Below are positions 20,708 through 52,096 of a DNA stretch of 64,000 nucleotides, one piece after another (within the stretch, counting starts at the first letter, position 1; each line of letters opens with the position of its first letter). A program made the translations under genes and the position numbers. The notes under the pieces are model-generated. The model was not told the origin of the DNA, made no database searches, and was given only the letters and a program-made list of their open reading frames with translations. Where the stretch lies: sequence record MF360958.1; one strand, written 5' to 3'.

Positions 20708-21325
20708 ATGAATTCTCAATTTTTATCTATATTAGAAAATGAAATAATAGAAAATCCAAAAAGTATACTTTTACATAAATCTTTATCAGGAGAATATTGG
20801 GATTTAGCAATACAATGTGATTATACTATATGGGATTATATGGAGAATCCATCATATGAGGTACTTGATTATTTGGTGGATATTTATCCATATCAAGTAG
20901 CGTGTAGGTTTAGTCATTTAATGGATGAGCAATTGTGTAAAAAAGCGGTATGTAATCATCCTGCTTCTATTAGTTTTATTGAAAATCCTAGTGAAGATTT
21001 ACAAATTATGGCAGTTCAAAATAATTTGTATGCTATTGAAAATATTAGGGTAGATTTAACTGAAAAGGCAAGGTTTGAAGCTGTAAAACATCATCCTAGT
21101 TCTATTTTATCTATTAAGAATAAAAATATATCAATTGAATTAATGATGGTTGCGCTAGACCATTGTTGGGTGAAAAGTTTATACTTATTTTTAAAAAATA
21201 AAATGAATATTGATTATCATGAACATGATGAGTTTAGAAAACAGTTCAATAAGTTATGGCTGAAAAATGGGCCATTATATAATGACATAAAATATAATAA
21301 ATTTAATGGTGCAACTTGGGTATAA
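20708..21325 (+). CDS. NPS-repeat (DUF4116-like) paralog family protein
   Basis: IENPSEDLQIMAV repeats; C-terminal NKLWLKNGP. Confidence 0.8.
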   Translation: MNSQFLSILENEIIENPKSILLHKSLSGEYWDLAIQCDYTIWDYMENPSYEVLDYLVDIYPYQVACRFSHLMDEQLCKKAVCNHPASISFIENPSEDLQIMAVQNNLYAIENIRVDLTEKARFEAVKHHPSSILSIKNKNISIELMMVALDHCWVKSLYLFLKNKMNIDYHEHDEFRKQFNKLWLKNGPLYNDIKYNKFNGATWV

Positions 21326-21330
21326 AAATT

Positions 21331-21945
21331 ATGGGAAAAATACGTGATATTGAATTAAATAGATTTCCTTATAAAATATTGGAAATAGAAAATCCTAGCA
21401 CGCATCAATGGTATCTTGCTTTGTGTAAAGAACCCTATTTGCTTGAATATAATCAAAATCCTAGTTTTGTATTGCTTGAAAGGATGTGTAAAGAAAAGCC
21501 TCATATAATGATTAGAGATTATCATCATCTATTATCTGAAGATCAAAAAATGACAGCAATATATCATAATCCGGTTATGATTAGTGCTATTGACAATCCT
21601 GATGAAAAAATTCAATTATATGCTGTAATGTTGTCTTCTTATGCTATAACCGGTATTAAAAATCCATCAGAGAAAATTTTGTTACAAGCTGTTAAACATT
21701 GGCCTGATAGTATACTGCGTATTAAAAATAGAAACATTACTAAAGAAATGATATTAATTGCTTTAGAAAAGCGCTGGGATAAGAATTTTTTAGATAGGAT
21801 TGAGAAAAAACTAAGACTAAAACATATTCCAAAAGATCATTGGTTTAAATATGAATTGAAAAAACTTAAAGTAAAAAATGGTCCAATGAGTGATAATCAT
21901 GTTTATTACATAAAATATAAAAATGGTGGCGGAATTGACACATAA
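21331..21945 (+). CDS. NPS-repeat paralog family protein
   Basis: IKNPSEKILLQAV repeats; C-terminal KKLKVKNGP. Confidence 0.8.
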   Translation: MGKIRDIELNRFPYKILEIENPSTHQWYLALCKEPYLLEYNQNPSFVLLERMCKEKPHIMIRDYHHLLSEDQKMTAIYHNPVMISAIDNPDEKIQLYAVMLSSYAITGIKNPSEKILLQAVKHWPDSILRIKNRNITKEMILIALEKRWDKNFLDRIEKKLRLKHIPKDHWFKYELKKLKVKNGPMSDNHVYYIKYKNGGGIDT

Positions 21946-22441
21946 ATGGTATAATAAAGAAAAAGCAATTGATAAAGATAGGGTAGAAATTAATGGAGAT
22001 TATATAAAGAATTATAAAAATCCTAGTGAAAAATTACAACTAATTGCTGTTCAAGAGAATGGTTTAAGTATACGTTTTATCAAAAATCCTACTAAAAAAG
22101 TGAAATATAAAGCTGTAGAAAATCATGAAGCTGCTATTGGTTGGATTGATAATCCTAGTAAAGAGTTACAATTATATGCTATTAAACATTCAATATTAGC
22201 ATTACAATGGATTAAAAATCCTTATTATTGTGTGAAATATAATGCAATATTACAAGATTGTTATGCAATTAAATATTTACAATCTCTTGAAGATGAATTA
22301 CAACTTTTAGCACTTCAGTATTGTCATAATAAAGATAAAAAAGATATCTATAATTTCATTATTCATTTTTACACACGTGATAATGAAGAACGATTTAATC
22401 ATCAAGTTAAAAAATTAAAACTAAAGTACGGGCCTTTTTAA
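21923..22441 (+). CDS. NPS-repeat paralog family protein
   Basis: IDNPSKELQLYAI repeats; C-terminal KKLKLKYGPF. Confidence 0.8.
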   Translation: MVAELTHKWYNKEKAIDKDRVEINGDYIKNYKNPSEKLQLIAVQENGLSIRFIKNPTKKVKYKAVENHEAAIGWIDNPSKELQLYAIKHSILALQWIKNPYYCVKYNAILQDCYAIKYLQSLEDELQLLALQYCHNKDKKDIYNFIIHFYTRDNEERFNHQVKKLKLKYGPF

Positions 22442-22498
22442 TGAATATATTTTAACAAGGATATAAAAAATTGCAATTAAAACATAGAGTTATAAATA

Positions 22499-22909
22499 AT
22501 GACAAAACCAATAATATCTAACAAAGATCTGAATTCAGTCATACATGAAACTTATAGAAAAATACCCCGAAGTGAAATTGTGGAAAATATTTTAGCTAAT
22601 CCATATAATATACAATACGTAGATGATCCTGATGAGCAATTACAAAATATCGCCGTATGTGATAATGGATATGCTATACAATTTATTAAAAATCCTTCAG
22701 AACAAATAATTATTGAAGCTATTGATAACGAACCGCAAAGTATAAAATATCTTGATTATCCTTCTGATAATATTCAATTAAGAGCTATTGAGCATATATG
22801 GAGAATATCATTTTATGATATGATGATGAAAATATTTTCTCGGGATGATGAAGAAAAATTTAATCATGATATTAATAAAATGAAGATAAAGTACGGTCCA
22901 ATGGGTTAA
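22499..22909 (+). CDS. NPS-repeat paralog family protein
   Basis: IKNPSEQIIIEAI repeats; C-terminal NKMKIKYGPM. Confidence 0.8.
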   Translation: MTKPIISNKDLNSVIHETYRKIPRSEIVENILANPYNIQYVDDPDEQLQNIAVCDNGYAIQFIKNPSEQIIIEAIDNEPQSIKYLDYPSDNIQLRAIEHIWRISFYDMMMKIFSRDDEEKFNHDINKMKIKYGPMG

Positions 22910-22919
22910 TTAGGTAGAT

Positions 22920-23720
22920 ATGAGCACAACAAAAAATACTAATAAGAAAGTAACTAAGATCAGTGATTTTTATATTCAAGGTGATCGAATAGGATTTAGA
23001 AATAAACAAAAAGATAATGATACAATTGATTATCGTTTCATGGTTCAGATTAGATGGGAATCAAGCAGAGATTGCATGGGTAGAAATTGTGGGGATGGTC
23101 CTTGTCGATGTGAAGAAATTGAAGAAACATGGATTGAAGATGATCAAGCTGAATTATTTTCTGGTGTTTATCTAAGTGTTTTAAATGCTATCAAGACAAA
23201 AAATTTAACGACCAATCGTAAGGTAAAAGCTGATCAATTTTTAAACACTATTCATAAGTATTGTATTGAGCGTTTATGTGTTCATCATAATGTGCATAAT
23301 AAAGATCTGTATGATATTGATGTTGTAGGTGGTTATTACGGTCAGGAAATTGGTTCAGTAACCTTTGAGAATCAAAAAGAATTAAACGATGATATTTTAT
23401 ACATTCTCAATACATGTAAGAATGATATCGAACGAATTAAATTTATATTGGAAAAAGAGTATGCGTATCTTTTAGACAGTATTGAAAATGTTACACAGTG
23501 TGATATAGAGTATTTTAATGTTAAAGATATTGCGAAAAATAGTATAGAACTAACACGTATTAAAAATAATGACAATGAATATTTTATTGAGCTTGATCCT
23601 AAAAGTATGCCTATAGGAATTATTCACAATAATGTTCTTATTGATGGTCATAATCGTACTAAAAAAATACTAGGGGATATTGACACAAATAAAGAATGTT
23701 GCTATATTGTACTAAGTTAA
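22920..23720 (+). CDS. hypothetical protein with Cys cluster and ParB/Srx-like motif
   Basis: CxxxxCxxxxCRC near the N-terminus; VLIDGHNR near the C-terminus. Confidence 0.5.
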   Translation: MSTTKNTNKKVTKISDFYIQGDRIGFRNKQKDNDTIDYRFMVQIRWESSRDCMGRNCGDGPCRCEEIEETWIEDDQAELFSGVYLSVLNAIKTKNLTTNRKVKADQFLNTIHKYCIERLCVHHNVHNKDLYDIDVVGGYYGQEIGSVTFENQKELNDDILYILNTCKNDIERIKFILEKEYAYLLDSIENVTQCDIEYFNVKDIAKNSIELTRIKNNDNEYFIELDPKSMPIGIIHNNVLIDGHNRTKKILGDIDTNKECCYIVLS

Positions 23721-23737
23721 TTTAAAGGAGAAACACT

Positions 23738-23977
23738 ATGAGTTCTGGTGCAGAATTTCTTGTTGGTAATTATTACGAAGTTGTTGGCCTTGGAGTAATG
23801 GATGGTGATGAAACATGCACTGCTACTTCCACACAACCTACAGGATATGTTCGTCATCCTGATTGGGATGAAATGATTCCTGTGAACCTCAACTACTTCG
23901 GGGAAGGTGAAGTTGGTGAGTTCGCCGTTTACCTTGGATACGACAAGAAAAGGCATAGTCTTTCCTACGAAATGTAA
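23738..23977 (+). CDS. hypothetical protein
   Basis: AAGGAG RBS, 79 aa. Confidence 0.75.
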   Translation: MSSGAEFLVGNYYEVVGLGVMDGDETCTATSTQPTGYVRHPDWDEMIPVNLNYFGEGEVGEFAVYLGYDKKRHSLSYEM

Positions 23978-24057
23978 ACATACCATTCTCCTATATTGTT
24001 CAAATAATATAAATACTATTAGAATAATTAACAGAATATTATAGGATAAAGTTTATA

Positions 24058-24798
24058 ATGAGTATTAAGTGGAATAATGTAAAACAACAAGGTCAATCCA
24101 AAGTAAAGAAAGCAAGCCCTACAGTCGATCTAGGTATTGGTCCTACCGAACTGATAGCGGGTGACATGCAAGCAGGATTTTTCGGAGAGGTTTTAGCTTC
24201 CGAACTATTCACCGGTCCTGAACTAGCTAGTGAAATCAATCTCACAGCAGGTATAGCTCAATATGACAATGAACCATGGCTAAAGTTTGCTTATAAGGGA
24301 GAGATCCTATATGTAGCTAAGAAACCTTACAGACACACCGTTTCTTGGGATGATATACAAGCAGTAGATGCGGTATATGGTGGAGAAAATGATGCGGAAG
24401 TAGGTAAGTCAGGCTATAATTTTAAAGTACGTTTACTAAAAGGTGCTAGTAACGATCCTACCAGTTGGGATGACTCGGGTACTGATGATGAAGGAGCTAG
24501 TAATTCAAGATATGATCCTGTTGAAAGTATTGGATCTGAATGGAATAATTTAATTTATAAAGTTCATGAGTACAGCCCTGTTAACCAAGAAGGTTCAAAT
24601 TGGGCAAATTATACTGATAGTGATATTGTAGTGGGTAGTGGAGATGGTAGAGTTACATGGTGTCAAGAAACACCTAGCTACGATACTTCAAGACGTGTTC
24701 ACCGTGGTAATTCTTCCTTGTCTTACTTCATTACCCCTACCTCGTCTTATTCCCCTTCTATTTGCGGCTGGCGTCCATGCTTAACACTGATCACGTGA
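24058..24798 (+). CDS. putative virion protein with C-type-lectin-like fold; candidate DGR target
   Basis: GPTELIAGD...WLKFAYKG...VSWDDI...SEWN...WCQE...RVHRG...GWRP; late promoter TATAAATA at 24008-24015. Confidence 0.7.
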   Translation: MSIKWNNVKQQGQSKVKKASPTVDLGIGPTELIAGDMQAGFFGEVLASELFTGPELASEINLTAGIAQYDNEPWLKFAYKGEILYVAKKPYRHTVSWDDIQAVDAVYGGENDAEVGKSGYNFKVRLLKGASNDPTSWDDSGTDDEGASNSRYDPVESIGSEWNNLIYKVHEYSPVNQEGSNWANYTDSDIVVGSGDGRVTWCQETPSYDTSRRVHRGNSSLSYFITPTSSYSPSICGWRPCLTLIT

Positions 24799-25465: not shown

Positions 25466-25466
25466 T

Positions 25467-26516: not shown

Positions 26517-27230
26517 ATGATTTATTTGGATTATTCACAATGGAACGGGGCCTATAATACAAAACAATATTTAAACGACTATATACAAATTCCTATCGAT
26601 ATTTCAACATTACTGGATAATCGTTTATTTGAATTTTATTGTTGTGACAAATGCCCAATAGATTTTTTCTGTAATGAAAAAACCATGAGTAATCATGATA
26701 AAAGAATTATATTTAATTTTATGTATGAACATTATCCACATTATTTAACATTAAAATGGTCCTTTCCTATAATTCCTGCATCACATAAAGAATTTAAATA
26801 TAAAAACACAGTTAATAATGTTTTATTTATAGACGACCAACTCTATCAACATTATGTTAATAAAATTGATCATGAATGTAATAACATTTTAAAACAAATT
26901 TATATTACAAATGAATCTTTAAGAAATAAAATTAATAGAATTTATATTTACCCATATAATATAAATCTGACACTTTATTCAATAAAATCTGCTTTTTATC
27001 AAATCACATCAATAGATGATGTTGAGGCTGTTAAACCAGAAAATCTAGATTTCCAAATTGATACATTTTATCGTTATCGTATCGTTTTTGAAATTGAAGA
27101 AAAGAATGTAAATTATCTCAAACTTGATTCGTATTTTATTGAAAGGTTTTTAAATAATGGAAAAATTTATGATAGCTACGAAGAAGTTGTTAATAAAATG
27201 GTTTCTTCGCAATTATACTTTATGATGTAA
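26517..27230 (+). CDS. paralog family B hypothetical protein
   Basis: LRNKINRIYIYP and IVFEIEEKNVNYLKL motifs shared with 29155, 35653, 36293. Confidence 0.7.
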   Translation: MIYLDYSQWNGAYNTKQYLNDYIQIPIDISTLLDNRLFEFYCCDKCPIDFFCNEKTMSNHDKRIIFNFMYEHYPHYLTLKWSFPIIPASHKEFKYKNTVNNVLFIDDQLYQHYVNKIDHECNNILKQIYITNESLRNKINRIYIYPYNINLTLYSIKSAFYQITSIDDVEAVKPENLDFQIDTFYRYRIVFEIEEKNVNYLKLDSYFIERFLNNGKIYDSYEEVVNKMVSSQLYFMM

Positions 27231-28913: not shown

Positions 28914-29165
28914 ATGAGTAATAAGCAAAATTTTGAAGCAATGACTGACATTATTATTCAATATGAAGTTGATCATGATATTACCACACAAGCATTACGT
29001 AATGCTTCTGGTGAAGGTCATCCTCAAGCATTAGATATCATTACAGAAGAAGTAAATAAAGCCTTGGTAAATATTGAAAATCGTATCAATAATGAAGTGG
29101 AAGGTTGTGAATATACTGATTGTTTAGATCTCAGTGTTAATGGTGATGCTACTGATGGATTCTGA
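28914..29165 (+). CDS. hypothetical protein
   Basis: 83-aa ORF. Confidence 0.7.
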   Translation: MSNKQNFEAMTDIIIQYEVDHDITTQALRNASGEGHPQALDIITEEVNKALVNIENRINNEVEGCEYTDCLDLSVNGDATDGF

Positions 29166-29799
29166 TCGTATTGATCGTATATCACTTTTAAACAATTCTT
29201 ACCTTATAAATTTTTTAAGATTCTCTCCTATTAAGTTAACAAACGAACTTGATAATCAAATTATCGAATCCTATATTAACAGAAAAGTTTATGATGATTT
29301 AGTAAATGATGGATTCCCATCTCGTTATTCAATCCGACTTTATCCTAAACGTTTAAAAAATACTTTAGGGGTTAATGATCGGGCCATTATTGATAATGAT
29401 TTATATGAACAAATACATACCCGAGCAATGAATATAAACAAATCAATTGCTGTAGATACTATTAGAAAAGTATTATCTGATAGTATTGCTGAAAAAATCG
29501 TAAATGTTAATGTAATTTACCCTAACAATTATCTGTTATTAGGTTGTTATATTAATAGAGCATATTTCAATCCAAATTCTCCTATATTTAAATGTGATAT
29601 TGATACTAGTAGGAAATTAGATGTAATGCCATGGGCTTCAAAAATAATAATAGAACTTGATATACAGCATAAAGAACTGAATCGATTAAAATTAAATAAT
29701 CGGTTTTTCTTTGACTATATATATCGTGATAGTTATATTAACACACCTATTACTGAAATATTAAGTCCGTGTAATGAAGTTTATTTAGATCAGGAGTAG
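29155..29799 (+). CDS. paralog family B hypothetical protein
   Basis: IAEKIVNVNVIYP; IIIELDIQHKELNRLKL. Confidence 0.7.
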   Translation: MDSDRIDRISLLNNSYLINFLRFSPIKLTNELDNQIIESYINRKVYDDLVNDGFPSRYSIRLYPKRLKNTLGVNDRAIIDNDLYEQIHTRAMNINKSIAVDTIRKVLSDSIAEKIVNVNVIYPNNYLLLGCYINRAYFNPNSPIFKCDIDTSRKLDVMPWASKIIIELDIQHKELNRLKLNNRFFFDYIYRDSYINTPITEILSPCNEVYLDQE

Positions 29800-34891: not shown

Positions 34892-35653
34892 ATGAATTAT
34901 CTCGCATTTACTTATATAGATTTTGTAAACGTTATGATTAATAACGATTGGTATCCATTAGATGAAGATACTAAAGATGAGGTTTCTACAGCTATTATCA
35001 CACGGCTCCCTCCTATGAGTAATGATGATGAAACCTATCTATATTGTACTAAACAATATACTCGAAAGACCAGAATCAGTTGTAAACGCGAAGCCCTAAC
35101 ATTGTGCCGCCCTCGTGTATATAACTATGATTATAAAGAACATTATATAAATCGAAATAAATGTGATCATGTTGCTCAGTTCGTCACATCCCAATATTAT
35201 ATAAAAAATATTTTAGAACCAATTCTTGAAAATATAGAAACTCGTGTCGAAATGATGCTTGATAAAATTGTTGATACTGTTGATTGTTATCAATATTTTA
35301 CTATTAAAGGATGCATTCAAAATAATATAAATCGTGTTTTTATAGACTTTGCGGAAGCTATTAAAAAAGTTAATAATAAAGGAAAAGTACAGTTTTCTTA
35401 TAGTGATATACAACATCTCATCGAGGATAGAGATTATTTTTATTATGCCGAAAATCCATTAAGTTCAATTTTTCTTGTAATGTGTATTTCGGATCGTGAT
35501 CTGAAAGTATTAAAAATGTCGAGACAATGGGAAGTTATTTTTTCAAAAATTGTTCATGAAAAATGTATAAACAATGTCGAATCATTTTTTGACTACCGAT
35601 CTAATGAATTCCCAATTAATAGTTATCAACAACAACGAATTAAAGGAACATAA
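34892..35653 (+). CDS. paralog family B-related hypothetical protein
   Basis: FLVMCISDRDLKVLKM near the C-terminus. Confidence 0.65.
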   Translation: MNYLAFTYIDFVNVMINNDWYPLDEDTKDEVSTAIITRLPPMSNDDETYLYCTKQYTRKTRISCKREALTLCRPRVYNYDYKEHYINRNKCDHVAQFVTSQYYIKNILEPILENIETRVEMMLDKIVDTVDCYQYFTIKGCIQNNINRVFIDFAEAIKKVNNKGKVQFSYSDIQHLIEDRDYFYYAENPLSSIFLVMCISDRDLKVLKMSRQWEVIFSKIVHEKCINNVESFFDYRSNEFPINSYQQQRIKGT

Positions 35654-36300
35654 TGACGGATACGAAAGTTTTAACGTTAAATGGCAGTTACACATTGGAT
35701 AATCAAAACTTACTTTTTGATAGGGATAAAGTAAGAGATGGTTTAAAATTAACTATTGAAGACACAGAGTACTTACTTAAAAATACTATGGGTGCTCTAT
35801 CACAACTGTATTTTAATTTAGTATTTCCTGTTATTAATGATGATACAAATACTGAACTCAAATCGTATTGTGTTTCAGATGAGAATAGTTATATTTACAT
35901 GAAAAAATCTTTTGAGAATTTTTATGATGATTGGTATAATCATTTTTATAACGATTTTCTACCAGACCATGTATTAAAACGAATTAAACGAATTAAAGTA
36001 ACATTCAATGAACTTCAATTAGGATTATCCATACCTAATAATCTTGTATATCAAAGTGGTATAGACTGTCTCGATGATTATATAAATCTTCAACAAATAC
36101 CTATTTCATGTTCTGCTGATGTAAAAACAAATTTTGTTATTAATAACAAAGACTTGAACCGGTTAAAACTTGATCCTTATTTTTACGAACATGTATATCA
36201 ACATGTCACAGAAATTGTAGATCATAATTTGGTAGATTTAGATGCTAATTATATAAAGCATGAATTATATTACAATGAAAGGGTTCGATATAATGAATAA
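35653..36300 (+). CDS. paralog family B hypothetical protein
   Basis: LPDHVLKRIKRIKVTF; FVINNKDLNRLKLDPYFYEHVY. Confidence 0.7.
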   Translation: MTDTKVLTLNGSYTLDNQNLLFDRDKVRDGLKLTIEDTEYLLKNTMGALSQLYFNLVFPVINDDTNTELKSYCVSDENSYIYMKKSFENFYDDWYNHFYNDFLPDHVLKRIKRIKVTFNELQLGLSIPNNLVYQSGIDCLDDYINLQQIPISCSADVKTNFVINNKDLNRLKLDPYFYEHVYQHVTEIVDHNLVDLDANYIKHELYYNERVRYNE

Positions 36301-36913
36301 TTACACATTAACTGTCGTCAATAATCACTATTTGAGTAATATGATTCAGGACATAAGTTATGAGATAGTTAATCCTATTGAGCATAATTTTGATGAAAAA
36401 ATTCAAAATGTCTTTTTCTCAGATTTTTTAAAAGATTATATGTTAGAAGAATTAAAACGTCATAATAATTCTGAATTTAGAAGTACTGTGAATTTTGTTC
36501 CTGATGATATATCTGATATGGAGCAAAAGATAGAATCAGCTATTATTGTTCCAGATAAAACATATACCAATGTTTCTTCCGAAGTCATTGAATATTATAG
36601 ATCAAGAGATTTAGATGATTTATATCAAACTATTCCAGACACCATCACAAATAGATTGAATAGCATTGATGTTTATTACAGCGTACATGGTATAAGATTA
36701 AACTGTGCTTTTATAGAAAAGAATCATAATATTGATGAAATTAATTTTAATAAACCCTTTCAATTTTATTTGATGGGGGATTTTGTTGTAGAATTTAATG
36801 TGTCTCATCATAATCTCAATTATTTAAAGAATTTCAGTAATATATTCAGCGATATCTATAACGAATGCGCTATGGATACTTCACGAGAATCCATCCTTGA
36901 AAAACTGCCCTGA
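36293..36913 (+). CDS. paralog family B hypothetical protein
   Basis: IPDTITNRLNSIDVYY; VVEFNVSHHNLNYLK. Confidence 0.7.
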   Translation: MNNYTLTVVNNHYLSNMIQDISYEIVNPIEHNFDEKIQNVFFSDFLKDYMLEELKRHNNSEFRSTVNFVPDDISDMEQKIESAIIVPDKTYTNVSSEVIEYYRSRDLDDLYQTIPDTITNRLNSIDVYYSVHGIRLNCAFIEKNHNIDEINFNKPFQFYLMGDFVVEFNVSHHNLNYLKNFSNIFSDIYNECAMDTSRESILEKLP

Positions 36914-39102: not shown

Positions 39103-39203
39103 GGGTGTTGACGAGGACATTATTTATAGATATAATGTTTACAGAATTTGAGGAAAAGCCCTCAAAGACACCTAAACTAAAATTGTACAGGAGATTGAAA
39201 ATG
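39103..39203 (+). promoter_or_regulatory. early promoter plus 5' leader module, copy 1
   Basis: TTGACG(39108)-17 nt-TATAAT(39131), hairpin TTTGAGG/CCTCAAA, AGGAG RBS; about 90% identical to 47861-47960. Confidence 0.9.
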
Positions 39204-39557: not shown

Positions 39558-40025
39558 TTATGTCCAAAAACCCGCATCAACTGTACCGGGATCAACAGCT
39601 ATACCCCATATACGATCATTGTTGGTTTCATATTTCCATAACTCATTGCCTGTACTATCTAATTTCCGTACTGTGTTATCTCTGCTACCACTATAAACAT
39701 TACCATTTTGATCCACCGCTACTGATTCAACACTACTAGTATGTTTGCTAAAGACCCATAATTCGCTACCTGAACTATCTATTTTTCGTACTGTATTGTC
39801 ATCAGAACCACTATAAACATTACCTTCGATATCTACTGCTAATGCTCTAACACTATCAGTATGATTACTAAAGGCCCATAATTCGTTACCTAAACTATCT
39901 ATTTTATAGACCGAATTATTGTCATATCCTGTTGCATACACATTAGGATTCTCAATAATATTACTAGGTGCTTTTTTCACTTTAAATTGTCCCCTAAATG
40001 GTATACCATTCATTTTTAGTCCCAT
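39558..40025 (-). CDS. small beta-propeller (WD40/PQQ-like) repeat protein
   Basis: Three about 40-aa repeats VYSGSxDNTVRK[IL]DSxG[NS]ELWxF...VAVD; AATAAATA at 40054-40061 (minus). Confidence 0.85.
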   Translation of the reverse strand: MGLKMNGIPFRGQFKVKKAPSNIIENPNVYATGYDNNSVYKIDSLGNELWAFSNHTDSVRALAVDIEGNVYSGSDDNTVRKIDSSGSELWVFSKHTSSVESVAVDQNGNVYSGSRDNTVRKLDSTGNELWKYETNNDRIWGIAVDPGTVDAGFWT

Positions 40026-40707: not shown

Positions 40708-42096
40708 TTATTCATCGTCTTCTACGAAATCAACCTTCAATTTAAGTTTATTAAGCATGGAATTAAATTCCGTATAATTTAACAGTTGGTTCAACGGTTC
40801 TTCATTATAAACATAATCTAAATTATTTTGATAGTTGTTATTAGTCAACCATTTTTCAATCATATTCGCAATATTATCAATACTAAATGGACAAGGAACC
40901 GAAGTATGTTTTTTAGTATTATATCCATCCCAATTTAGAAAAGGGCGAACAAAGAAATGATTGATGAATTCAAGATGTGATTCATTAATACAATTTATAT
41001 CTAATGCATTGTTTAGACATTTAAAAAAATCGTTTTCGATATAATCATTATCTATACAGAATAGATCACGATACAGTAGAATATAATTCATGGCATTAAT
41101 AATTATCTTAGGCGTAGGGTTATTCATAGTATACCTGCCAAATGAATTATACCTGTTTTTAAAATAATAAGCATGAAAGTTTGAAATCATTTGTTTAATA
41201 AAAAGGTATTTTAATTCACCAACATTAACGTTGTTCAGCGCGGATCTATATAAATTATTACGCTTGTGTCTGAATGTTACAGGACAAAAATAATGTTCGT
41301 AAAGTTGCTTACAATATTCATTGGGTTTATATAGAAGATAAATATCTTCTGGATATTCCCCATAGCTCATCCAATTGAAAGTCGTATTTTCATTATTCAC
41401 AAGAATTAAACAGTTATTGACTATATGCCTAGCAATCGCTAAATCATTGTGATTGAAATCCTGTATGTATTTTTCATTTAGTTTAACTAAAAATTGCCTG
41501 AAGTGCTTAGCAGTAATTATTACTTTTGGAGAATAGTAGTGTGGTTCTTCATTACTGTAATTTTTATTAAACACCCGCAGTTCGTTTAACAGACTCAACG
41601 ATGTTAAGAAATCAGGTTTCATCAAATAATTGTTAAAGCAAAAAGGTAATAATTCATTATCTTCTGTGAGTTTATATTTCATTGTGGCGCTGAGCTTATC
41701 AATACAAATTTGAACATTATCACTTACATACCAGAAACTATGATTTTTATGATTATCTTTTTCGAACTGTTTGTAGAAATCTGCATTCTTTATAACTTGT
41801 TCATTAAATTCACAACTTTTAGGAAGCTTATAGTGTGTTAATTCATTTTTTGAATTTTTAATTTGTGCTACAATAGCACTCATAATACGATCATCTGTCC
41901 AAAATTCTTGATCAAATTCTAATTCTTTAGCAATAAATCGTGCTTCACTAATCATTGCATTCATTTCACTTGAATCACAATGTGGAAGAAGAATAATGTC
42001 ATAAAAAGATTGTTTCTTTACTTCATCAATAAACATTTCAAATTCAGATTCACTACATGGTTCTCCCATGTAAAAGATATGGCTTCGGTTGGTCAT
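40708..42096 (-). CDS. hypothetical protein
   Basis: 462 aa; ends MLNKLKLKVDFVEDDE. Confidence 0.75.
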   Translation of the reverse strand: MTNRSHIFYMGEPCSESEFEMFIDEVKKQSFYDIILLPHCDSSEMNAMISEARFIAKELEFDQEFWTDDRIMSAIVAQIKNSKNELTHYKLPKSCEFNEQVIKNADFYKQFEKDNHKNHSFWYVSDNVQICIDKLSATMKYKLTEDNELLPFCFNNYLMKPDFLTSLSLLNELRVFNKNYSNEEPHYYSPKVIITAKHFRQFLVKLNEKYIQDFNHNDLAIARHIVNNCLILVNNENTTFNWMSYGEYPEDIYLLYKPNEYCKQLYEHYFCPVTFRHKRNNLYRSALNNVNVGELKYLFIKQMISNFHAYYFKNRYNSFGRYTMNNPTPKIIINAMNYILLYRDLFCIDNDYIENDFFKCLNNALDINCINESHLEFINHFFVRPFLNWDGYNTKKHTSVPCPFSIDNIANMIEKWLTNNNYQNNLDYVYNEEPLNQLLNYTEFNSMLNKLKLKVDFVEDDE

Positions 42097-42774: not shown

Positions 42775-43563
42775 ATGAAAAATTATACGATTAATGAATT
42801 ATTTGATGATCCTGATTTAATAGCAGAAATTGATAATCCTAGCGAGCAACAACAACTTGCTGCGGTATATGCAAATCCTAGAACTTTGTTTTTAATCAAA
42901 GATCCACCAGATAGTGTGACGTATTCAGCCGTTGATAAAGATGGATCTATTATCTCCGAAATAGAAAACCCGCCGTTTCGCTGTCAACTTTCTGCGATTC
43001 GTCAAGATCCGACATATTTTCTATTGATTGATAATCCTCATGAGCTTATTAAAGAAGAAATTGTTTCAGAACATGATCACGGGATAGGATGGATTAAAAA
43101 TCCATCTAAAAAATTAAAGTTGAAAGCAGTAGAAAAAAATCATAGAGCATTGAAGTATATTAAAGATGCGGATTATGATATACAATATTATGCAATAGCG
43201 CATAACGGCTTTGCTATTAAATACTGTGATAATCCTTCAGAAGAATTACAATTTATTGCTATTCGAGATCGTGTTGAAAGTATACATTATATTCAAAATC
43301 CTACGTATAATGTCATTTATGAATGTGTACAAAATTATCCTGATTATCTTCACACAACGGGTCTTGGTGCATTAGTTAGACAAAAAATCGATGAAGATAT
43401 TCTTTTAGCAGCTATTGAAGCGTCATGGTATGCAGATTGCGTTTTTTATGATAAAATGATGTTTCATTTTGGTAGTAATATAACTGACCAAGACTACTTT
43501 TATAGAGAAATCAAAAAGTTAAAAGTAAAATATGGTCCTATGAATTGCACTATGAAAATTTGA
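42775..43563 (+). CDS. NPS-repeat paralog family protein
   Basis: About nine NPS/NPP repeats; C-terminal KKLKVKYGPM. Confidence 0.8.
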   Translation: MKNYTINELFDDPDLIAEIDNPSEQQQLAAVYANPRTLFLIKDPPDSVTYSAVDKDGSIISEIENPPFRCQLSAIRQDPTYFLLIDNPHELIKEEIVSEHDHGIGWIKNPSKKLKLKAVEKNHRALKYIKDADYDIQYYAIAHNGFAIKYCDNPSEELQFIAIRDRVESIHYIQNPTYNVIYECVQNYPDYLHTTGLGALVRQKIDEDILLAAIEASWYADCVFYDKMMFHFGSNITDQDYFYREIKKLKVKYGPMNCTMKI

Positions 43564-44699: not shown

Positions 44700-45101
44700 A
44701 TGGTTACGTTAACAAATAATCGCATAATGAAAATTAATCAAATGACAGATGATGAAAAAATTCAATATATTTTTACTCATAATAGAGTAAGCCTTGTTGA
44801 GTACATCACAGAACCATCTCAATACTTTCAAATGGAAATTGTTAAAAGGATGCCTTCATTGGTTATTTTTTTACAAGATCCTATTGAAGAAGTTCAAATT
44901 TATGCTGTAAAGGAGAATGGATTCATTTTAGAGTATATTGAAGAACCTAGCGATAATGTTCAGTTAGAAGCATTAAAACATAAATGGATTGATAAAATTT
45001 ATCATCATATCCTAAAGAATTGCAAACAAGAAAATAAAAAATTCTTTAATAAAGAACTTAATAAATTAAAACTATTAAATGGTGCTCTTAGAGAAATATA
45101 A
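44700..45101 (+). CDS. NPS-repeat paralog family protein
   Basis: IEEPSDNVQLEAL repeats; C-terminal NKLKLLNGA. Confidence 0.8.
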   Translation: MVTLTNNRIMKINQMTDDEKIQYIFTHNRVSLVEYITEPSQYFQMEIVKRMPSLVIFLQDPIEEVQIYAVKENGFILEYIEEPSDNVQLEALKHKWIDKIYHHILKNCKQENKKFFNKELNKLKLLNGALREI

Positions 45102-45104
45102 AAT

Positions 45105-45815
45105 ATGTTAACTATTGATGAAATTAAAGATATTGAAAATAATCCAGAAAAACTTAAATCATTTGATGATGACAAGTTAAAAGTTTGTATTCTTAATGCT
45201 CCCCAATTATTTCCATTAATGGAAAATCCTTCTTATGATGTATGTGTTTTTGCTGTTGTTACTTATCCTTATCTTATAAAAGAGATCTCTAATCCTAGTA
45301 TAAAATTAATAGAAGAATGCGTGATAAATTCACCATTATCACTTCAATTTTTTACAGAAGATCAAATTAATAATATTAATCATGATGTTTTGCTAAGAGC
45401 TGTTGAAAAAAGAGATAATACTATAAGACATATCCCAAATCCTAGTAAAGAACTCCAAATGCTTTCTGTTGAAAGTAAAGGAACTAATATTTCATATATT
45501 GATAATCCATATGAGGACGTTTGTATACAAGCAGTTAAAACATCACCAGTTAGTATTCGATATATTAAAAATCCATCCAGAGATGCTAAATTATTAGCCG
45601 TAAAATTATCAGGCGTTGCATTACAATTTATTGATTTTCCTGATGATGAAATGCAAATTGAAGCTCTTAAAAGTCATTGGTTTGAAGAATTTTACTATGA
45701 AATTTTAGAAAATTGTATAAGAACAGATCCTGAAGGTTTCTTTAAATCTGTTAAAAAATTAAAACTGGAAAAAGGACCAATGAAATCCTATGTAGATTTT
45801 GAAGATGATGATTAA
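45105..45815 (+). CDS. NPS-repeat paralog family protein
   Basis: IPNPSKELQMLSV repeats; C-terminal KKLKLEKGPM. Confidence 0.8.
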   Translation: MLTIDEIKDIENNPEKLKSFDDDKLKVCILNAPQLFPLMENPSYDVCVFAVVTYPYLIKEISNPSIKLIEECVINSPLSLQFFTEDQINNINHDVLLRAVEKRDNTIRHIPNPSKELQMLSVESKGTNISYIDNPYEDVCIQAVKTSPVSIRYIKNPSRDAKLLAVKLSGVALQFIDFPDDEMQIEALKSHWFEEFYYEILENCIRTDPEGFFKSVKKLKLEKGPMKSYVDFEDDD

Positions 45816-46376: not shown

Positions 46377-46904
46377 ATGAAAAAATTTAAAACTATTGTG
46401 ACAATGATGATCATCGCTATGGCTCTTGTCGTTGCGGGTTGTAATAAAGATACAACTTCAGAAAAACAGGAAGAAGTACGTGATGATGTTCTTACCCGAG
46501 CAAACAATGCTGAGCCTCCGTATAAGCCTAGTAATTTCCTTGTACGTCAATATGTCAATGAATATATGAAACGGCTGGATAACCCTAATAAAACTTGGTA
46601 TATCTATCTACTTGGAGATAACGGTAACCATATTGGTTATTATGTTGCACGTAGTCATCCTGTGAATATTTGTACATTCCTAACGCCTCCTGACAAAATT
46701 GAAGGTATGGGTGATAGTCGTAGGGTACGTAAAGCACCCGCTCTTGATGGAGCATACTATGGTGGTGGTGCTTGTAATAAAGAATATTTCTTCACAGCAA
46801 GTACTGATGCTCTTATGTCTGTGCCTACACATATGAAGAAAATTGTTTCAGATCAACCTCTGGAAATTGATGTGGAACAAATTAAAGTACAGATCCAGAA
46901 GTAA
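46377..46904 (+). CDS. lipoprotein
   Basis: Lipobox VVAG-C after a hydrophobic signal. Confidence 0.8.
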   Translation: MKKFKTIVTMMIIAMALVVAGCNKDTTSEKQEEVRDDVLTRANNAEPPYKPSNFLVRQYVNEYMKRLDNPNKTWYIYLLGDNGNHIGYYVARSHPVNICTFLTPPDKIEGMGDSRRVRKAPALDGAYYGGGACNKEYFFTASTDALMSVPTHMKKIVSDQPLEIDVEQIKVQIQK

Positions 46905-46917
46905 AAGAGTAAACTTT

Positions 46918-46950
46918 AAAAACTTGGGCATAAATCATGCCCAAGTTTTT
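46918..46950 (+). terminator. intrinsic terminator
   Basis: AAAAACTTGGGCAT-AAATC-ATGCCCAAGTTTTT. Confidence 0.8.
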
Positions 46951-46968
46951 ACTATTAAGGGATGTATA

Positions 46969-47688
46969 ATGTTTAAAAAAATACTTTATTTTCATTTTAT
47001 GGTAGTTATTGGGTGTTGTCCAAAAATTCTAAAATTGTTTAAACAACCACTCAGTGATGAACTACAACTCTATCTTATTAAAAAGTGTTCTTTTACTATC
47101 AAATATATGAAAGCACCATGTAGTGCTGTGCAATGGTATATTTTTAATCAATTAGATATAAATCATCTCTATTATATTGATAATGTGGATGAAGATTTAC
47201 AAGAACATTTGGTTAATATTGACTATTCATTAATTAAATATATAAAATATCCAAAAGAAGAACTTCAAATAAAAGTTTTAGAACAAACAATTACTAATCT
47301 TTGTTTTATAAACTATCCTTGTTTTAAAGCTCAAGAATTAGTAATGAATATTTATCCGGCTTTTTTATCCATTATTAGTGAAAAAGTACGTTATGAAGAA
47401 ATCGAACTAATGGCTGTTAGAAAAGATGGCAACCTATTATGTTGTTGTAGTTTTCAAACATCTAAAATATGCCGCGAAGCTGTTAATAATACTGGCTATG
47501 CATATTATTATATTAAACATCCAACTCAAGAAGAAGCATTATTAGCATTATCTAATTGTTGGGAAAAAAATCTATACCATAAAGTTGTTGAAGATATGTT
47601 TAATCATGAATCCAAGATACCGAGTGTATGGTTTAAACGCGAATTCAACAAGCTGAAACTTAAAAATGGAGCATTTGATAATGAGTAA
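46969..47688 (+). CDS. NPS-repeat paralog family protein (divergent)
   Basis: IKYPKEELQIKVL repeats; C-terminal NKLKLKNGA; start moved to ATG 46969. Confidence 0.75.
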   Translation: MFKKILYFHFMVVIGCCPKILKLFKQPLSDELQLYLIKKCSFTIKYMKAPCSAVQWYIFNQLDINHLYYIDNVDEDLQEHLVNIDYSLIKYIKYPKEELQIKVLEQTITNLCFINYPCFKAQELVMNIYPAFLSIISEKVRYEEIELMAVRKDGNLLCCCSFQTSKICREAVNNTGYAYYYIKHPTQEEALLALSNCWEKNLYHKVVEDMFNHESKIPSVWFKREFNKLKLKNGAFDNE

Positions 47689-47846: not shown

Positions 47847-47860
47847 GAAATTTTTATAGT

Positions 47861-47960
47861 GGGTGTTGACGAAGGTATTATATATAGATATAATGTTTAC
47901 AGAATTTGAGGGAAAACTCTCAAAACATCTAAACTAAAATTGTATAGGAGATTGAAAATG
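47861..47960 (+). promoter_or_regulatory. early promoter plus 5' leader module, copy 2
   Basis: TTGACG(47866)-17 nt-TATAAT(47889), hairpin TTTGAGGG/CTCTCAAA, AGGAG RBS. Confidence 0.9.
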
Positions 47961-48563: not shown

Positions 48564-48596
48564 TCTTAAAATAATATTAGTTAATACAATATTTTA

Positions 48597-48633: not shown

Positions 48634-48710
48634 ATTCAAAAAACTATATAGTTTATTTGTGATTTTCATAAATACGTTACATAATTACAAATGGATAATG
48701 GAGATAAAAC

Positions 48711-48926
48711 ATGAAATTAAGCAATTTACAAAAAGATTTTTCTATTTATGATGCAGAGGGTAACCCCGTAGGACTATTACAGATTAAACAACAAGAAGAT
48801 AATAATGGTGATGCGTGTGATAATGTTAATATTGCTATAGCATTAGCTGGTGATACACCACTACGATTCAATTCTAAAGAAGAATTTGAAGAGTTCGTAG
48901 AGTTAGTTAGAAGCAATTACCAATAA
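48711..48926 (+). CDS. small late protein
   Basis: CATAAATA upstream, GGAG RBS. Confidence 0.75.
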   Translation: MKLSNLQKDFSIYDAEGNPVGLLQIKQQEDNNGDACDNVNIAIALAGDTPLRFNSKEEFEEFVELVRSNYQ

Positions 48927-49064
48927 ATTAATAATGAAAGACTTTATTTTTTAGAATTTAACTATTGATTTAACTGTTAAACCTTGATAAACTGTCAATA
49001 ACTATAATGTTACATACTTTTTATAGTATGTAATGATCTAATTTTAACTATAAAAAGGATAACT

Positions 49065-51359
49065 ATGACAACATCTGAACAATTTCAAACTGAGAATGCT
49101 GAAAGTAAATCAAAACAAAATATTGATAATAACTCTAATAATATTGAAACATTCTATAAACGTTTCGAACCTAAATTTGCCCACCATAATAGTCTTTCCA
49201 CTCATATTAAAAAAGAAAATGTTGCTATTCGTAAAAAAGTAGCTAAACAAAAAATGAATTCTGAAGATTGTTATGATTTAATACGTATATCAGAAGGTAA
49301 TGATTTTGAACTAAACGGGTCAAATACGATATTTTCAACACCAGATGTTACGGAATCTCTTATAGATCGAATAACAAAAAAATCAAATAATTTATTCATG
49401 ACAAAACCACAGAAAGGGTCTTGTATGAGTCCTTTCATGATACAAGGAAGAAAGTCTAGGAAAAATAATCTAACGACAATTACTGGTGAATTCTCGGTAG
49501 ATTTTAATTTTATATTGAATTGTGAAGGCTTTTTTGAATTCATGATCTATTTTTATGATCTTCTATATCATAATCCTGCTGATCAGGAATTGATTGATCT
49601 TTATCATAATTTTGTTGTTAATTCATTGTCTATTACCGATGGTGATAAAAAAAGAACAAGTAGGTATGATAAATCCTGCTCTATTGTGGTATTTCATTTT
49701 TCAGAAATCCTTTATAAAGTTATTAAAAATACAATTGGAAATTATAGTATCCCATCACAAAAATATCCCAAACTGTATAAAATTGATAACAATGAGAATT
49801 TTGATCAATCAATGAAAAATACCAAAGCATTTGATTATAATACAGGTTCGACTAAGTTTGTTGATATGTATGAAGATTTGATTACAAATTCTCTACTGAA
49901 TCAAGGTCAGAGTATAAAATACAATCTAGACTATGAATACAGCGGTTCTAATGATGAAAAAGAGCATTGGAATTATGAACAATTGTTTAATGATGCATCA
50001 TCATTATTTGAAAATCTACTTAAAGAAACCAATTATCGATCTATCATTTCCAAAGGCATGAACCCTTTAAAAGATAAAAATGTTATCGAACGGGTAAAAC
50101 AGACAATTGATACAAATACAGTTTTGACCGTGATATCTCCTACTTATACGTTTATTGATTGGTCTAATGTTAAACAGTTTCATAAGCAATATTATGAGAC
50201 TATTAATGAATTTTTTGCATTTGCGTTGGATGGCGAACTTCGAGAATCTGAAGATGTTGTTAATGAAAACGCTCTTCAATATCTTCGAAGAGCAATACAG
50301 AATGACTTAAATATATCAGGGAATGAATATATTTCATTAGATATACTTGAATTTTATATGAATTTAGTATTCTCTACTAAAGAACTTAATGACAAAGAAA
50401 CATTTTGTTTAAGTCTTATGAAATCTAATTCCGCATTGAGTACACAATCAAGCACTATGCTTTTATCCAGTACAGGGTTTCGAAATAATAAAAATGATAT
50501 TGGTAAGGATTCATTTGAAAATCATATTCCTTCTTATATTATTGATGCGTATACAAAAGATATAAACTGTACTACTGATGAACATTGTCGTCGAATGTAT
50601 ACGTTTTATAATCATGATGCCGTGAATGATAAAAATTATTCAGGTATGTCCTATGCTTTTCTAAGGAAAAATATTTCGAACAGTCTCAAAGTCGATAATC
50701 AATTTATCATAGAGATGAATCCTACTCATAAGCGAAAAATTAACGAATTACGTGAGTATTTTAAGTCGCGTAATATTGATATGAAAATCAATAATAAGAT
50801 AAGCCATACTCAAATTGAACAAGATTATCCATTTATAGTGAATTTTAAGTTTAATAACACTCAGTATAATCCATCAGGAAGTAACATAGGGCTGGATAAG
50901 CTAGAACACTTTTTTATGTTATTATCTAAGTACTACGATAATATTAATTTCAAATTTAACATTGGTGTATTTGATTTAAGAGCTAATTTCAGTAAAATTA
51001 AAAATGGTATTTTATGTAAACTTGAAAGAATTAATGAGAATTTGGAGTTTTTTAAAGAACTTGGTGACATAGCCAATAAAGACTATTTTGATGTTTTTGA
51101 CATTAAAGTATTTAAACCTAAAATCAATCATCATAAATGGGTTTTTAAAAACCATCATAAACTATTTTATAACTTGTTTGAAAGACTATTCGGAGATAAT
51201 AATGGTGGTATTTATGATTTCAGTGTCATGGTAGAAACTGACAGTCGTAAATTTATGAACATGGCTAAATTGGGCGATGTTAAGCCTAACTATATTAAGC
51301 TAAACATTGAAAATCTTGATGAGATATATCAATTAGCCGTTATTGAGAATAAAATTTAA
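49065..51359 (+). CDS. large hypothetical protein
   Basis: 764 aa; C-terminal YDFSVMVETDSRKFMNMAKL. Confidence 0.8.
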   Translation: MTTSEQFQTENAESKSKQNIDNNSNNIETFYKRFEPKFAHHNSLSTHIKKENVAIRKKVAKQKMNSEDCYDLIRISEGNDFELNGSNTIFSTPDVTESLIDRITKKSNNLFMTKPQKGSCMSPFMIQGRKSRKNNLTTITGEFSVDFNFILNCEGFFEFMIYFYDLLYHNPADQELIDLYHNFVVNSLSITDGDKKRTSRYDKSCSIVVFHFSEILYKVIKNTIGNYSIPSQKYPKLYKIDNNENFDQSMKNTKAFDYNTGSTKFVDMYEDLITNSLLNQGQSIKYNLDYEYSGSNDEKEHWNYEQLFNDASSLFENLLKETNYRSIISKGMNPLKDKNVIERVKQTIDTNTVLTVISPTYTFIDWSNVKQFHKQYYETINEFFAFALDGELRESEDVVNENALQYLRRAIQNDLNISGNEYISLDILEFYMNLVFSTKELNDKETFCLSLMKSNSALSTQSSTMLLSSTGFRNNKNDIGKDSFENHIPSYIIDAYTKDINCTTDEHCRRMYTFYNHDAVNDKNYSGMSYAFLRKNISNSLKVDNQFIIEMNPTHKRKINELREYFKSRNIDMKINNKISHTQIEQDYPFIVNFKFNNTQYNPSGSNIGLDKLEHFFMLLSKYYDNINFKFNIGVFDLRANFSKIKNGILCKLERINENLEFFKELGDIANKDYFDVFDIKVFKPKINHHKWVFKNHHKLFYNLFERLFGDNNGGIYDFSVMVETDSRKFMNMAKLGDVKPNYIKLNIENLDEIYQLAVIENKI

Positions 51360-51366
51360 GGATACT

Positions 51367-52096
51367 ATGCAATATAAATCTATTAAACAAAAATACCATT
51401 ATTGTAATAGCAAAAATACTAGAGGTTTAAGAGAAAGGATCTTTAATCATTCTAATAATGTTGATTCTATCAGAAATGTTAAAGATGTAGATTGTTTAGA
51501 ACATGATTTGATTATTGACGATACTCAACTCATACATTTTGAATCAACTTCGTACTCATTAATGAACCTACCGTACTTTAATCAATTCGGTATTGATATG
51601 TACGAATTAATCAATGACAATGATTCCAGAAAAATTTTCAATTACACATTTGATTGTTTAGAAACAAAAAATAGTAACGATTATGAAAACGTTATTAATT
51701 TTATTACTAATAACACGAACTATTCTTATTCTTTAGATTCCACCTCTTTATTTGGATGGTTCCTTATTACTACTAGTTGTCCTTTAAAAGAAAAGTTTAA
51801 GAATGTATTAAATGAAAATTTTGAAACAGTTGAGCAAAATAAAAATGAATCAATTCGGATATTATAAGCCATTCATTCCTAGCTTTAATAAAATGTTTGA
51901 AGAAAATTATGATCTGAATTATTTTATGGATGTATTGGATGACTTAACTATGTACGATTTATCGATCACTGTAAAAATGGATTATCCTCATCGAAAATTT
52001 ATGAACAAACTAAAACTGTTTGAGGCAAAGCCTAAAAAGATAGTAGCCCATATCGAACATCCATTCTGGAAAACTATTGACAATGCGTTAAAATAA
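51367..52096 (+). other. two overlapping ORFs (51367-51867 and 51812-52096), probably one +1-frameshifted gene
   Basis: The joined product aligns by eye with the C-terminal domain of 49065-51359. Confidence 0.5.

What the first reader, a model, noticed from the sequence alone, without database searches (positions are those of the whole stretch)
20708..52096. A common C-terminal N-x-L-K-L motif on at least 14 proteins from unrelated families
Seen: NPS family ends are NKLWLKNGP, KKLKVKNGP, KKLKLKYGP, NKMKIKYGP, KKLKVKYGP, NKLKLLNGA, KKLKLEKGP, NKLKLKNGA. Family B ends are NVNYLKL, ELNRLKL, DLKVLKM, DLNRLKL, NLNYLK. Others are MLNKLKLK (40708), FMNKLKL (51812) and FMNMAKL (49065). The N-terminal bodies are unrelated. 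Inference: a portable address or docking tag, for example for a phage protease adaptor, a compartment or a shared scaffold. I know of no description of it.
Basis: partly seen in the sequence, partly recalled or inferred. Interest (0 to 1): 0.7.

Follow-up and report, generated by a model that had tools for sequence, protein, structure and literature searches.

The report
Shared Lys-Leu tail helix, jumbo phage
About one protein in eleven of the 440-kb Salicola phage SCTP-2, from more than ten apparently unrelated families, carries the same short lysine/leucine helix close to its C-terminus; it is far too frequent and too well conserved to be chance, and it is probably a shared contact surface whose partner is unknown.

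Summary
The window is the last 64 kb of Salicola phage SCTP-2 (MF360958.1). The motif is real. Across the genome the strict core [NK]K[LM]K[LVI] occurs 36 times, 33 of them in the last 50 residues, where 0.9 are expected. KLKL is the top tail 4-mer after collapsing paralogues. At least 49 of 534 ORFs carry the motif.

It is near the C-terminus, not at it: 2-44 residues follow the core. Eight of the window proteins are paralogues of one DUF4116 alpha-solenoid family, which has 33 members in the genome, 26 of them tailed. In that family the motif lies in a confidently predicted terminal capping helix followed by Gly-Pro. "Family B" is not a demonstrable family; its members share only a roughly 34-residue module around the core.

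Selection acts on the protein, because codon use in the motif matches the genome. The only outside homologue of gp516 (33% identical) keeps the tail. The capped DUF4116 subtype is rare: 46 hits among 1.84 billion representative proteins.

Best reading: a conserved, partly exposed Lys/Leu helix used as a common interaction surface. The partner is unknown; the phage's own Clp machines and the prohead core are candidates. The main rival is a purely structural cap spread by paralogy or fusion.

The parts
20708..21325 (+). gp480, DUF4116-family protein with tail helix (core NKLWL at window 21248-21262, 20 residues before the end)
21316..21945 (+). gp481, DUF4116-family protein with tail helix (core at 21859-21873)
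21923..22441 (+). gp482, DUF4116-family protein with tail helix (core at 22409-22423)
22499..22909 (+). gp483, DUF4116-family protein. AlphaFold2 model has mean pLDDT 93, is all-helical, and places the core (22874-22888) inside terminal helix 118-132
26517..27230 (+). gp491, 'family B' carrier. Core NYLKL at 27111-27125, 34 residues before the end, preceded by an alternating hydrophobic stretch
29134..29799 (+). gp495, 'family B' carrier (core NRLKL at 29680-29694)
34892..35653 (+). gp505, 'family B' carrier (core KVLKM at 35504-35518; a weak variant)
35653..36300 (+). gp506, 'family B' carrier (core NRLKL at 36157-36171)
36260..36913 (+). gp507, 'family B' carrier (core NYLKN at 36818-36832; a degenerate variant)
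40708..42096 (-). gp516, 462-aa ORFan with no DUF4116 similarity. Core NKLKL at 40738-40752, 9 residues before the end. The tail is kept in its only outside homologue
42775..43563 (+). gp518, DUF4116-family protein with tail helix (core at 43513-43527)
44700..45101 (+). gp521, DUF4116-family protein with tail helix (core at 45060-45074)
45105..45815 (+). gp522, DUF4116-family protein (Pfam PF13475 31.0 bits, above the 24.9 cutoff) with tail helix (core at 45753-45767)
46843..47688 (+). gp525, DUF4116-family protein with tail helix (core at 47647-47661)
49065..51359 (+). gp529, 764-aa ORFan. Degenerate core NMAKL at 51258-51272. A 37-residue local similarity to gp531 surrounds the core
51812..52096 (+). 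gp531, 94-aa ORFan (core NKLKL at 52004-52018, 25 residues before the end)
6823..7560 (-). Its flanks fit the pattern (aromatic at -5, Lys at -3, Val at -1)

Best explanation
The motif is a real short element of about 10-14 residues, kept by selection on the protein. It has hydrophobic residues at -5 and -1 and a basic residue at -3. The core follows: N or K, then K or R, L, K, and L/I/V.

In the expanded DUF4116 alpha-solenoid family it forms the last (capping) helix and is closed by Gly-Pro. By helical periodicity, positions -5, -1, +2 and +6 lie on one face, which I infer packs on the protein's own body. The lysines at -3, +1 and +5 and the conserved Leu at +4 lie on the other face, which I infer is exposed.

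The same core, with matching flanks, sits near the C-terminus of many other ORFan proteins whose bodies are unrelated. I therefore read it as a common interaction surface through which about 9% of the phage's proteins contact one shared partner.

Shown: that the motif exists, its enrichment, its position bias, its protein-level conservation, and its helical state in one family. Inferred: that one face is exposed, and that a single common partner exists. Unknown: which partner. Candidates are the phage's own ClpX/ClpA-like/ClpP/ClpS set and the prohead scaffolding core.
For: Enrichment and position bias are strong: 33 tail sites against 0.9 expected, with only 3 in protein bodies. KLKL is the top tail 4-mer across BLAST families.

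After the tails are removed, the carriers fall into the DUF4116 family, the gp340-345 family and more than 12 BLAST singletons. HMM and leave-one-out tests find no body similarity among them. Profile-profile comparison of the DUF4116 cap with the other two contexts aligns only the 7-residue core.

Flank positions that were not used to pick the singletons still fit the pattern: -1 is hydrophobic in 11 of 12 (p = 9e-5) and -3 is basic in 7 of 12 (p = 7e-4).

Codon use inside the motif equals genome usage. The same-codon share is 0.555 against 0.542 expected.

Column shares in the 26 tailed DUF4116 proteins are K 85% at +1, L 85% at +2, K 96% at +3, G 88% at +7 and F 69% at -5. These are the most informative columns in proteins that are otherwise 25-35% identical.

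The gp516 homologue on a metagenome contig is 33% identical overall and keeps the core and its flanks. Pooled over SCTP-2 proteins and their outside relatives, identity is 64% in the tail and 44% elsewhere.

The AlphaFold2 model of gp483 has pLDDT 93 and places the motif in helix 118-132.

As a negative control, about 200 ORFs on 16 AT-rich metagenome loci with ordinary DUF4116 genes gave 1 tail hit.
Against: No partner was found. In the only confident model the motif is part of the fold, so conservation could be structural. A published precedent warns of exactly this: the C-terminal ClpX-binding-like motif of RssB turned out to be integral to the fold and not the docking site (PMC7226468).

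Solvent exposure of the Lys/Leu face is deduced from helical periodicity and was not read from coordinates. The second context could not be modelled (pLDDT 33).

Everything rests on one isolate plus a few short metagenome contigs. Very old common ancestry of the carriers, or fusion with 3' ends of DUF4116 genes, cannot be excluded.
Confidence: 0.5

Rival explanations
1. Structural cap only. The helix is the C-terminal cap of the DUF4116 solenoid. It appears on other proteins because they are paralogues diverged beyond recognition, or products of fusion with 3' ends of the many DUF4116 genes. On this reading there is no common partner.
For: The motif lies in a packed, confident helix. gp433 (o426) joins the DUF4116 family by HMM. 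Its tandem neighbours gp430 (o423) and gp432 (o425) match the second half of the cap profile (E = 2e-4 and 9e-6). So some 'singletons' are indeed diverged family members. The same cap is found on DUF4116 proteins outside SCTP-2. The RssB precedent also fits.
Against: Surface-type lysines are the best-conserved columns. gp516 has a large unrelated body that is conserved with its homologue, yet it keeps the tail. The second context ('family B', gp340-345, gp529/531) shares only the core and not the cap. Seven DUF4116 paralogues do without the cap, so the solenoid does not need it to exist.
Confidence: 0.3
2. Address for encapsidation. On this reading the motif is a C-terminal counterpart of the capsid targeting sequence that T4 uses to load diverse internal proteins into the prohead core. 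The basic helix would bind the scaffold of the very large SCTP-2 head.
For: SCTP-2 has T4-type portal, prohead protease and major capsid protein genes. In T-even phages a diverse set of internal proteins shares only a short targeting sequence (PMC3012670). The carriers here are diverse, small and mostly ORFans.
Against: The T4 signal is N-terminal (from my own knowledge), whereas this one is near the C-terminus. There are no virion proteome data. Forty-nine or more cargo species is a large number. Carriers are only slightly more basic than other proteins. No late-promoter bias was seen.
Confidence: 0.15
3. Link to the phage's own Clp machinery. The tail would tether carriers to phage ClpX or the ClpA-like protein, as adaptors or as substrates, in the way the C-terminal ClpX-binding region of SspB docks on the ClpX zinc-binding domain.
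For: The phage encodes a ClpA-like AAA+ protein, ClpP, ClpS and ClpX. The phage ClpX N-terminus has two CxxC pairs. A shared C-terminal docking motif on unrelated adaptors is an established principle (PMC7226468).
Against: The motif is not at the extreme C-terminus and is predicted to be folded. The Pfam ClpX zinc-finger model was not reported for the phage ClpX at E <= 1e-3. The match to a solved ClpX zinc-binding domain is not significant (2ds7, E = 0.6). There is no co-occurrence evidence.
Confidence: 0.1
4. Compositional chance in a K/L/N-rich proteome.
For: The genome is about 30% G+C, and N, I, K and L are the commonest residues.
Against: Composition-preserving shuffles give 0.9 against 33 observed. 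Protein bodies show no excess. Other AT-rich contigs show none. With a Poisson mean of 0.9, the probability of 13 or more BLAST-independent families is 2e-11.
Confidence: 0.01
5. A nucleotide-level signal at gene 3' ends (promoter, terminator, recombination linker or RNA element) that merely happens to translate as the motif.
For: The motif lies close to gene ends, and AAATTAAA-type words are enriched upstream of carrier genes that follow another carrier.
Against: Leu, Lys and Asn codons in the motif follow genome usage. Identical residues share a codon no more often than expected (0.555 against 0.542). Mean nucleotide identity of the 39-nt segments is 0.52.
Confidence: 0.02

Closest known systems
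DUF4116 (Pfam PF13475) alpha-solenoid repeat proteins
   Same: Eight window carriers, and 33 genes in the genome, belong to this repeat family. gp522 scores above the Pfam cutoff. The fold is predicted to be an all-helical solenoid (PMC8078820).
   Different: Ordinary DUF4116 proteins lack the tail, for example P0003, P0004 and loci L017-L032. The capped subtype is rare: 46 hits at E <= 1e-3 among 1.84 billion representative proteins, and SCTP-2 is the only one of 50,697 phage records with it.
Capsid targeting sequence of T4 internal proteins
   Same: A T4-type phage in which very diverse small proteins share nothing but a short conserved signal (PMC3012670).
   Different: The T4 signal is N-terminal (my knowledge). 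Here the element is near the C-terminus, is helical, and in one family is part of the fold. No virion data exist.
C-terminal ClpX-binding region of the adaptors SspB and RssB, which docks on the ClpX zinc-binding domain
   Same: A short conserved C-terminal motif shared by unrelated proteins that contact one hub. The phage carries its own ClpX, ClpP, ClpS and a ClpA-like protein.
   Different: The SspB signal is a flexible peptide at the very end of the protein (my knowledge). Here 2-44 residues follow the core and the helix is predicted to be folded. No sequence relationship was tested with letters, and none came back from the searches.
Poxviral ankyrin-repeat / PRANC (F-box-like) proteins
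   Same: A large viral genome with an expanded family of helical-repeat proteins, each ending in one conserved C-terminal module that plugs variable binders into a common machine (PMC4353913 and PMC9414399, listed).
   Different: This is a different repeat type. The terminal element is much shorter than a PRANC/F-box-like domain. The host is bacterial and has no ubiquitin system. There was no Pfam match to PRANC or F-box. It is an analogy only.

Membership tests
DUF4116 (PF13475) | Match to the Pfam repeat model above the gathering score | tested here: met
   gp522 scores 31.0 bits and gp518 scores 24.9 bits against a cutoff of 24.9. gp480, 483 and 525 fall below the cutoff, and gp481, 482 and 521 have no hit. 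All eight are joined to the family by BLAST/HMM clustering, and outside relatives carry precomputed PF13475.
DUF4116 (PF13475) | Alpha-solenoid fold of tandem helical repeats | tested here: met
   The AlphaFold2 model of gp483 has pLDDT 93 and ten helices. Foldseek against the PDB returns only non-significant generic solenoids. The literature model of DUF4116 is an alpha-solenoid.
ClpX-binding tail of adaptors (SspB type) | Signal at the extreme C-terminus on a flexible, unfolded segment | tested here: not met
   Between 2 and 44 residues follow the core. In gp483 the motif lies in a helix with pLDDT above 90.
ClpX-binding tail of adaptors (SspB type) | A cognate ClpX with an N-terminal zinc-binding domain | tested here: inconclusive
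   The phage ClpX N-terminus shows CxxC...CxxC. The Pfam zinc-finger model was not reported at E <= 1e-3, and the solved ClpX zinc-binding domain 2ds7 matches only at E = 0.6.
ClpX-binding tail of adaptors (SspB type) | Physical binding of the tail to the ClpX N-domain | not testable with these tools
   No complex prediction or binding data were available.
T4-type capsid targeting sequence | N-terminal position, removed by the prohead protease (from my knowledge of T4) | tested here: not met
   The motif is in the last 50 residues of every carrier.
T4-type capsid targeting sequence | Carriers are found inside the virion | not testable with these tools
   No SCTP-2 virion proteome was found in the library.
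Poxvirus-type repeat protein with PRANC/F-box-like end | Pfam PRANC or F-box domain at the C-terminus | tested here: not met
   No such Pfam hit in any carrier.
   In leave-one-out HMM tests the left-out member was not found, or scored E >= 0.13. No BLAST links were found. By contrast gp340-345 passes the same test at E = 2e-7 to 6e-16.

The most novel reading that the evidence does not exclude
The motif is a lineage-specific C-terminal address that routes about 9% of the proteome of a T4-type jumbo phage, drawn from more than ten unrelated families, to one hub. The hub could be the interior of the giant head, as ejected proteins, which would make the motif a C-terminal counterpart of the T4 targeting signal. 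Alternatively it could be the phage's own Clp unfoldases. In either case the expanded DUF4116 solenoids would serve as interchangeable binding modules.
Probability: 0.3. Interest if true: 0.8.

Novelty: new variant of a known kind. Interest (0 to 1): 0.6.

Why it matters
Jumbo phages are full of ORFans with no handle for study. A single short element shared by 49 or more of them groups about 9% of one proteome into a probable functional class. It also gives a concrete, searchable signature for that class in metagenomes. If a common partner exists, it would be a bacterial-virus example of the "variable binder plus constant docking end" design known from poxviral ankyrin/F-box proteins, or of signal-directed loading as in T4 heads. 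It also defines a rare capped subtype of the uncharacterised DUF4116 repeat family.

Tried and rejected
- Chance or composition was rejected by shuffles, by permuted patterns, by the body-versus-tail contrast, and by AT-rich control contigs.
- A DNA- or RNA-level signal was rejected by the codon analysis.
- A shared upstream promoter word was not found. The T4-type late box is no more frequent upstream of carriers (2 of 49 against 31 of 484).
- Pfam and PHROGs gave no function for any carrier.
- Foldseek against the PDB gave nothing significant for the gp483 model.
- The AlphaFold2 model of gp491 built from alignment A2 failed (pLDDT 33).
- The cap profile against PDB sequences gave only a weak match to the C-terminal coiled coil of the mitochondrial ATPase inhibitor (E = 0.005). 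I take this as helical or compositional similarity.
- Searches for relatives of gp516 in IMG/VR found none. The big protein search found one homologue family for gp516 and none for family B.
- The metagenome scan with the cap alignment returned mostly ordinary DUF4116 loci, which I used as a control. A first attempt failed because the alignment had no conserved stretch.
- gp530 compared with gp529 showed no significant similarity.
- The pI of carriers is only slightly higher than that of other proteins.

These were adaptor and degron tails for ClpX, a membrane-targeting helix, a chaperone model peptide and clamp-binding motifs.

Full report
**Source.** The window is identical to the last 64 kb (record positions 376002-440001) of Salicola phage SCTP-2, MF360958.1. 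This is a 440,001-bp myovirus with T4-type core genes, isolated on Salicola sp. PV4 from an Italian saltern. Every carrier gene is annotated as a hypothetical protein. To test the motif genome-wide I fetched the record in overlapping pieces. I called ORFs separately in each piece without joining the pieces, which gave 534 non-overlapping ORFs; the record annotates 541.

**Observation.** All sixteen quoted strings are present. They are not literal ends. After the five-residue core come 5-23 residues in the eight NPS proteins, 26-44 in family B, 9 in gp516, 25 in gp531 and 28 in gp529.

**Enrichment.** The strict core [NK]K[LM]K[LVI] occurs 36 times in the proteome, 33 of them in the last 50 residues. 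Shuffles that keep the composition of body and tail separately give 0.9 tail sites, and none of 100 reaches the observed value. N.LKL gives 18 tail sites against 1.3 expected. The 80% of residues outside the tails hold only 3 strict sites. Orderings of the same residue classes that do not overlap the motif give 0-5 tail sites. An unbiased count of all 4-mers, scored by the number of BLAST families that carry them in the tail, puts KLKL first (11 families, 24 sites, 1.2 expected), followed by NKLK and KKLK. Counting weaker variants, at least 49 of 534 ORFs carry the motif. They are scattered over the whole genome in small clusters. Two more variants surfaced later, and one further candidate lies in the window at 6823-7560 on the minus strand.

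**Who carries it.**
An HMM adds gp433 (o426), making 33.
- This family is DUF4116. gp522 is above the Pfam cutoff, gp518 is at the cutoff, and the others are below it or have no hit.
- Twenty-six members have the tail, two of them in degenerate form. Seven lack it.
- A second true family is gp340-345, six tandem genes that pass leave-one-out tests at E = 2e-7 to 6e-16.
Once the module around the motif is removed, its five proteins show no detectable similarity.
- Twelve further carriers are BLAST singletons or a pair. These include gp516 and gp531.
- gp430 (o423) and gp432 (o425), which lie in tandem with gp433 (o426), match the second half of the cap profile and are probably diverged DUF4116 relatives.

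**Anatomy.**
- *DUF4116 context.* The motif ends a module of about 50 residues. Column shares among the 26 tailed members are F 69% at -5, I 50% at -1, N 50% / K 46% at 0, K 85% at +1, L 85% at +2, K 96% at +3, L 73% / I 19% at +4, G 88% at +7 and P 62% at +8.
- *Second context.* In gp340-345 and family B the core follows an alternating hydrophobic stretch, and an acidic/aromatic segment comes after it. Profile-profile comparison links the two groups over 34 columns only (E = 3.5e-4). gp531 and the end of gp529 share a comparable 37-residue stretch (E = 6e-6).
- *Between contexts.* The DUF4116 cap and this second context align over the 7-residue core only.
- *Singletons.* Positions that played no part in picking them still follow the DUF4116 pattern. 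Position -1 is hydrophobic in 11 of 12 and -3 is basic in 7 of 12.

**Level of selection.** Leu, Lys and Asn codons within the motif follow genome usage. Identical residues share a codon in 55.5% of pairs against 54.2% expected. The 39-nt segments are 52% identical on average. Conservation is therefore at the protein level. gp516 has a single outside homologue family. The copy on a 23.6-kb metagenome contig is 33% identical over the full length (E = 9e-74). It keeps the core and most of its flanks, and a tailed DUF4116 gene lies next to it. Pooled over sixteen pairs of SCTP-2 proteins and outside relatives, identity is 64% in the tail (-5 to +8) against 44% elsewhere. The pairs are not independent.

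**Structure.** The AlphaFold2 model of gp483, built from nine sequences, has mean pLDDT 93 and is all-helical. The motif lies in the last helix, residues 118-132, with block pLDDT of 94-97. In a regular helix, positions -5, -1, +2 and +6 fall on one face. The lysines at -3, +1 and +5 and the Leu at +4 fall on the other. That the first face packs on the solenoid and the second is exposed is my inference, because I had no coordinates. Foldseek found only non-significant generic solenoids. The model for the second context is unusable.

**Distribution elsewhere.** A profile of the cap found 46 proteins at E <= 1e-3 among 1.84 billion representatives. About twenty of them are not SCTP-2 proteins. 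These are small DUF4116 proteins from AT-rich, phage-like metagenome contigs, and in them the same cap is even more uniform: G 100% at +7, P 90% at +8 and W 65% at -6. Among 50,697 phage records only SCTP-2 has the cap. Ordinary DUF4116 loci lack it.

**Mechanism.** The best-supported reading is a conserved, partly exposed Lys/Leu helix that serves as a common contact surface (confidence 0.5). Two partner candidates follow from the genome.
- The phage encodes a ClpA-like protein, ClpP, ClpS and a ClpX whose N-terminus has two CxxC pairs. Adaptors are known to dock on the ClpX zinc-binding domain through a shared C-terminal motif.
- In T4-type phages, diverse internal proteins share only a short signal that loads them into the prohead core.

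Neither membership test is met (see the membership table), so these remain analogies. The same ClpX paper supplies the main caution: the RssB C-terminal motif proved to be part of the fold and not the docking site. The chief rival is therefore a purely structural cap spread by paralogy or fusion (0.3).

**Novelty and limits.** I found no description of the motif. The kind, a short shared terminal signal on unrelated proteins, is known. This sequence, its near-C-terminal helical form, its scale (about 9% of a proteome) and its tie to DUF4116 are new. All of this rests on one isolate and fragmentary relatives. The partner is unknown.

Noticed in passing
window 39120-39203 and 47880-47960 (+); L013:10490-10569: A conserved leader of about 85 nt lies directly upstream of two genes (gp512 and gp527). 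It has a TATAAT-like box, a GAGGG...CCCTC hairpin and an AGGAG ribosome-binding site. An exact 30-mer occurs only twice in the SCTP-2 genome and once upstream of the gp512 homologue on a metagenome contig.
   Followed up: partly
Weaker variants are at window 10644-11210 (-) and 16051-16719 (+).
   Followed up: partly
window 53355-53747 (-) and the record outside the window: 'Terminase large subunit' is annotated as three separate CDSs at distant places in the record (gp224, gp267, gp534), so the gene is in at least three pieces. Whether mobile insertions explain this was not examined.
   Followed up: no
window 58884-61649 (-): This 921-aa ORF clusters by BLAST with PhoH-like gp75, gp204, two terminase pieces and the RNR alpha subunit. 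That suggests a shared inserted domain. Pfam reports only a weak AAA_23 hit.
   Followed up: no
record outside the window (L003, L004, L005, L009, L002): The phage carries its own proteostasis and transcription set: a ClpA-like AAA+ protein (gp70), ClpP (gp122), ClpS (gp192), ClpX (gp194), Hsp20 (gp437), an RpoH-like sigma factor (gp39) and GreA (gp168).
   Followed up: partly
window 39558-40025 (-): A small 155-aa protein made of WD40/PQQ-type beta-propeller repeats (Pfam WD40 E = 1e-12). Eight other SCTP-2 proteins, including the giant ORFs, cluster with it by BLAST.
   Followed up: no
L008:4911-7765 (record 298911-301765): Six tandem small genes (gp340-345) form a true paralogous family. 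Every member carries the motif 23-37 residues before its end.
   Followed up: yes
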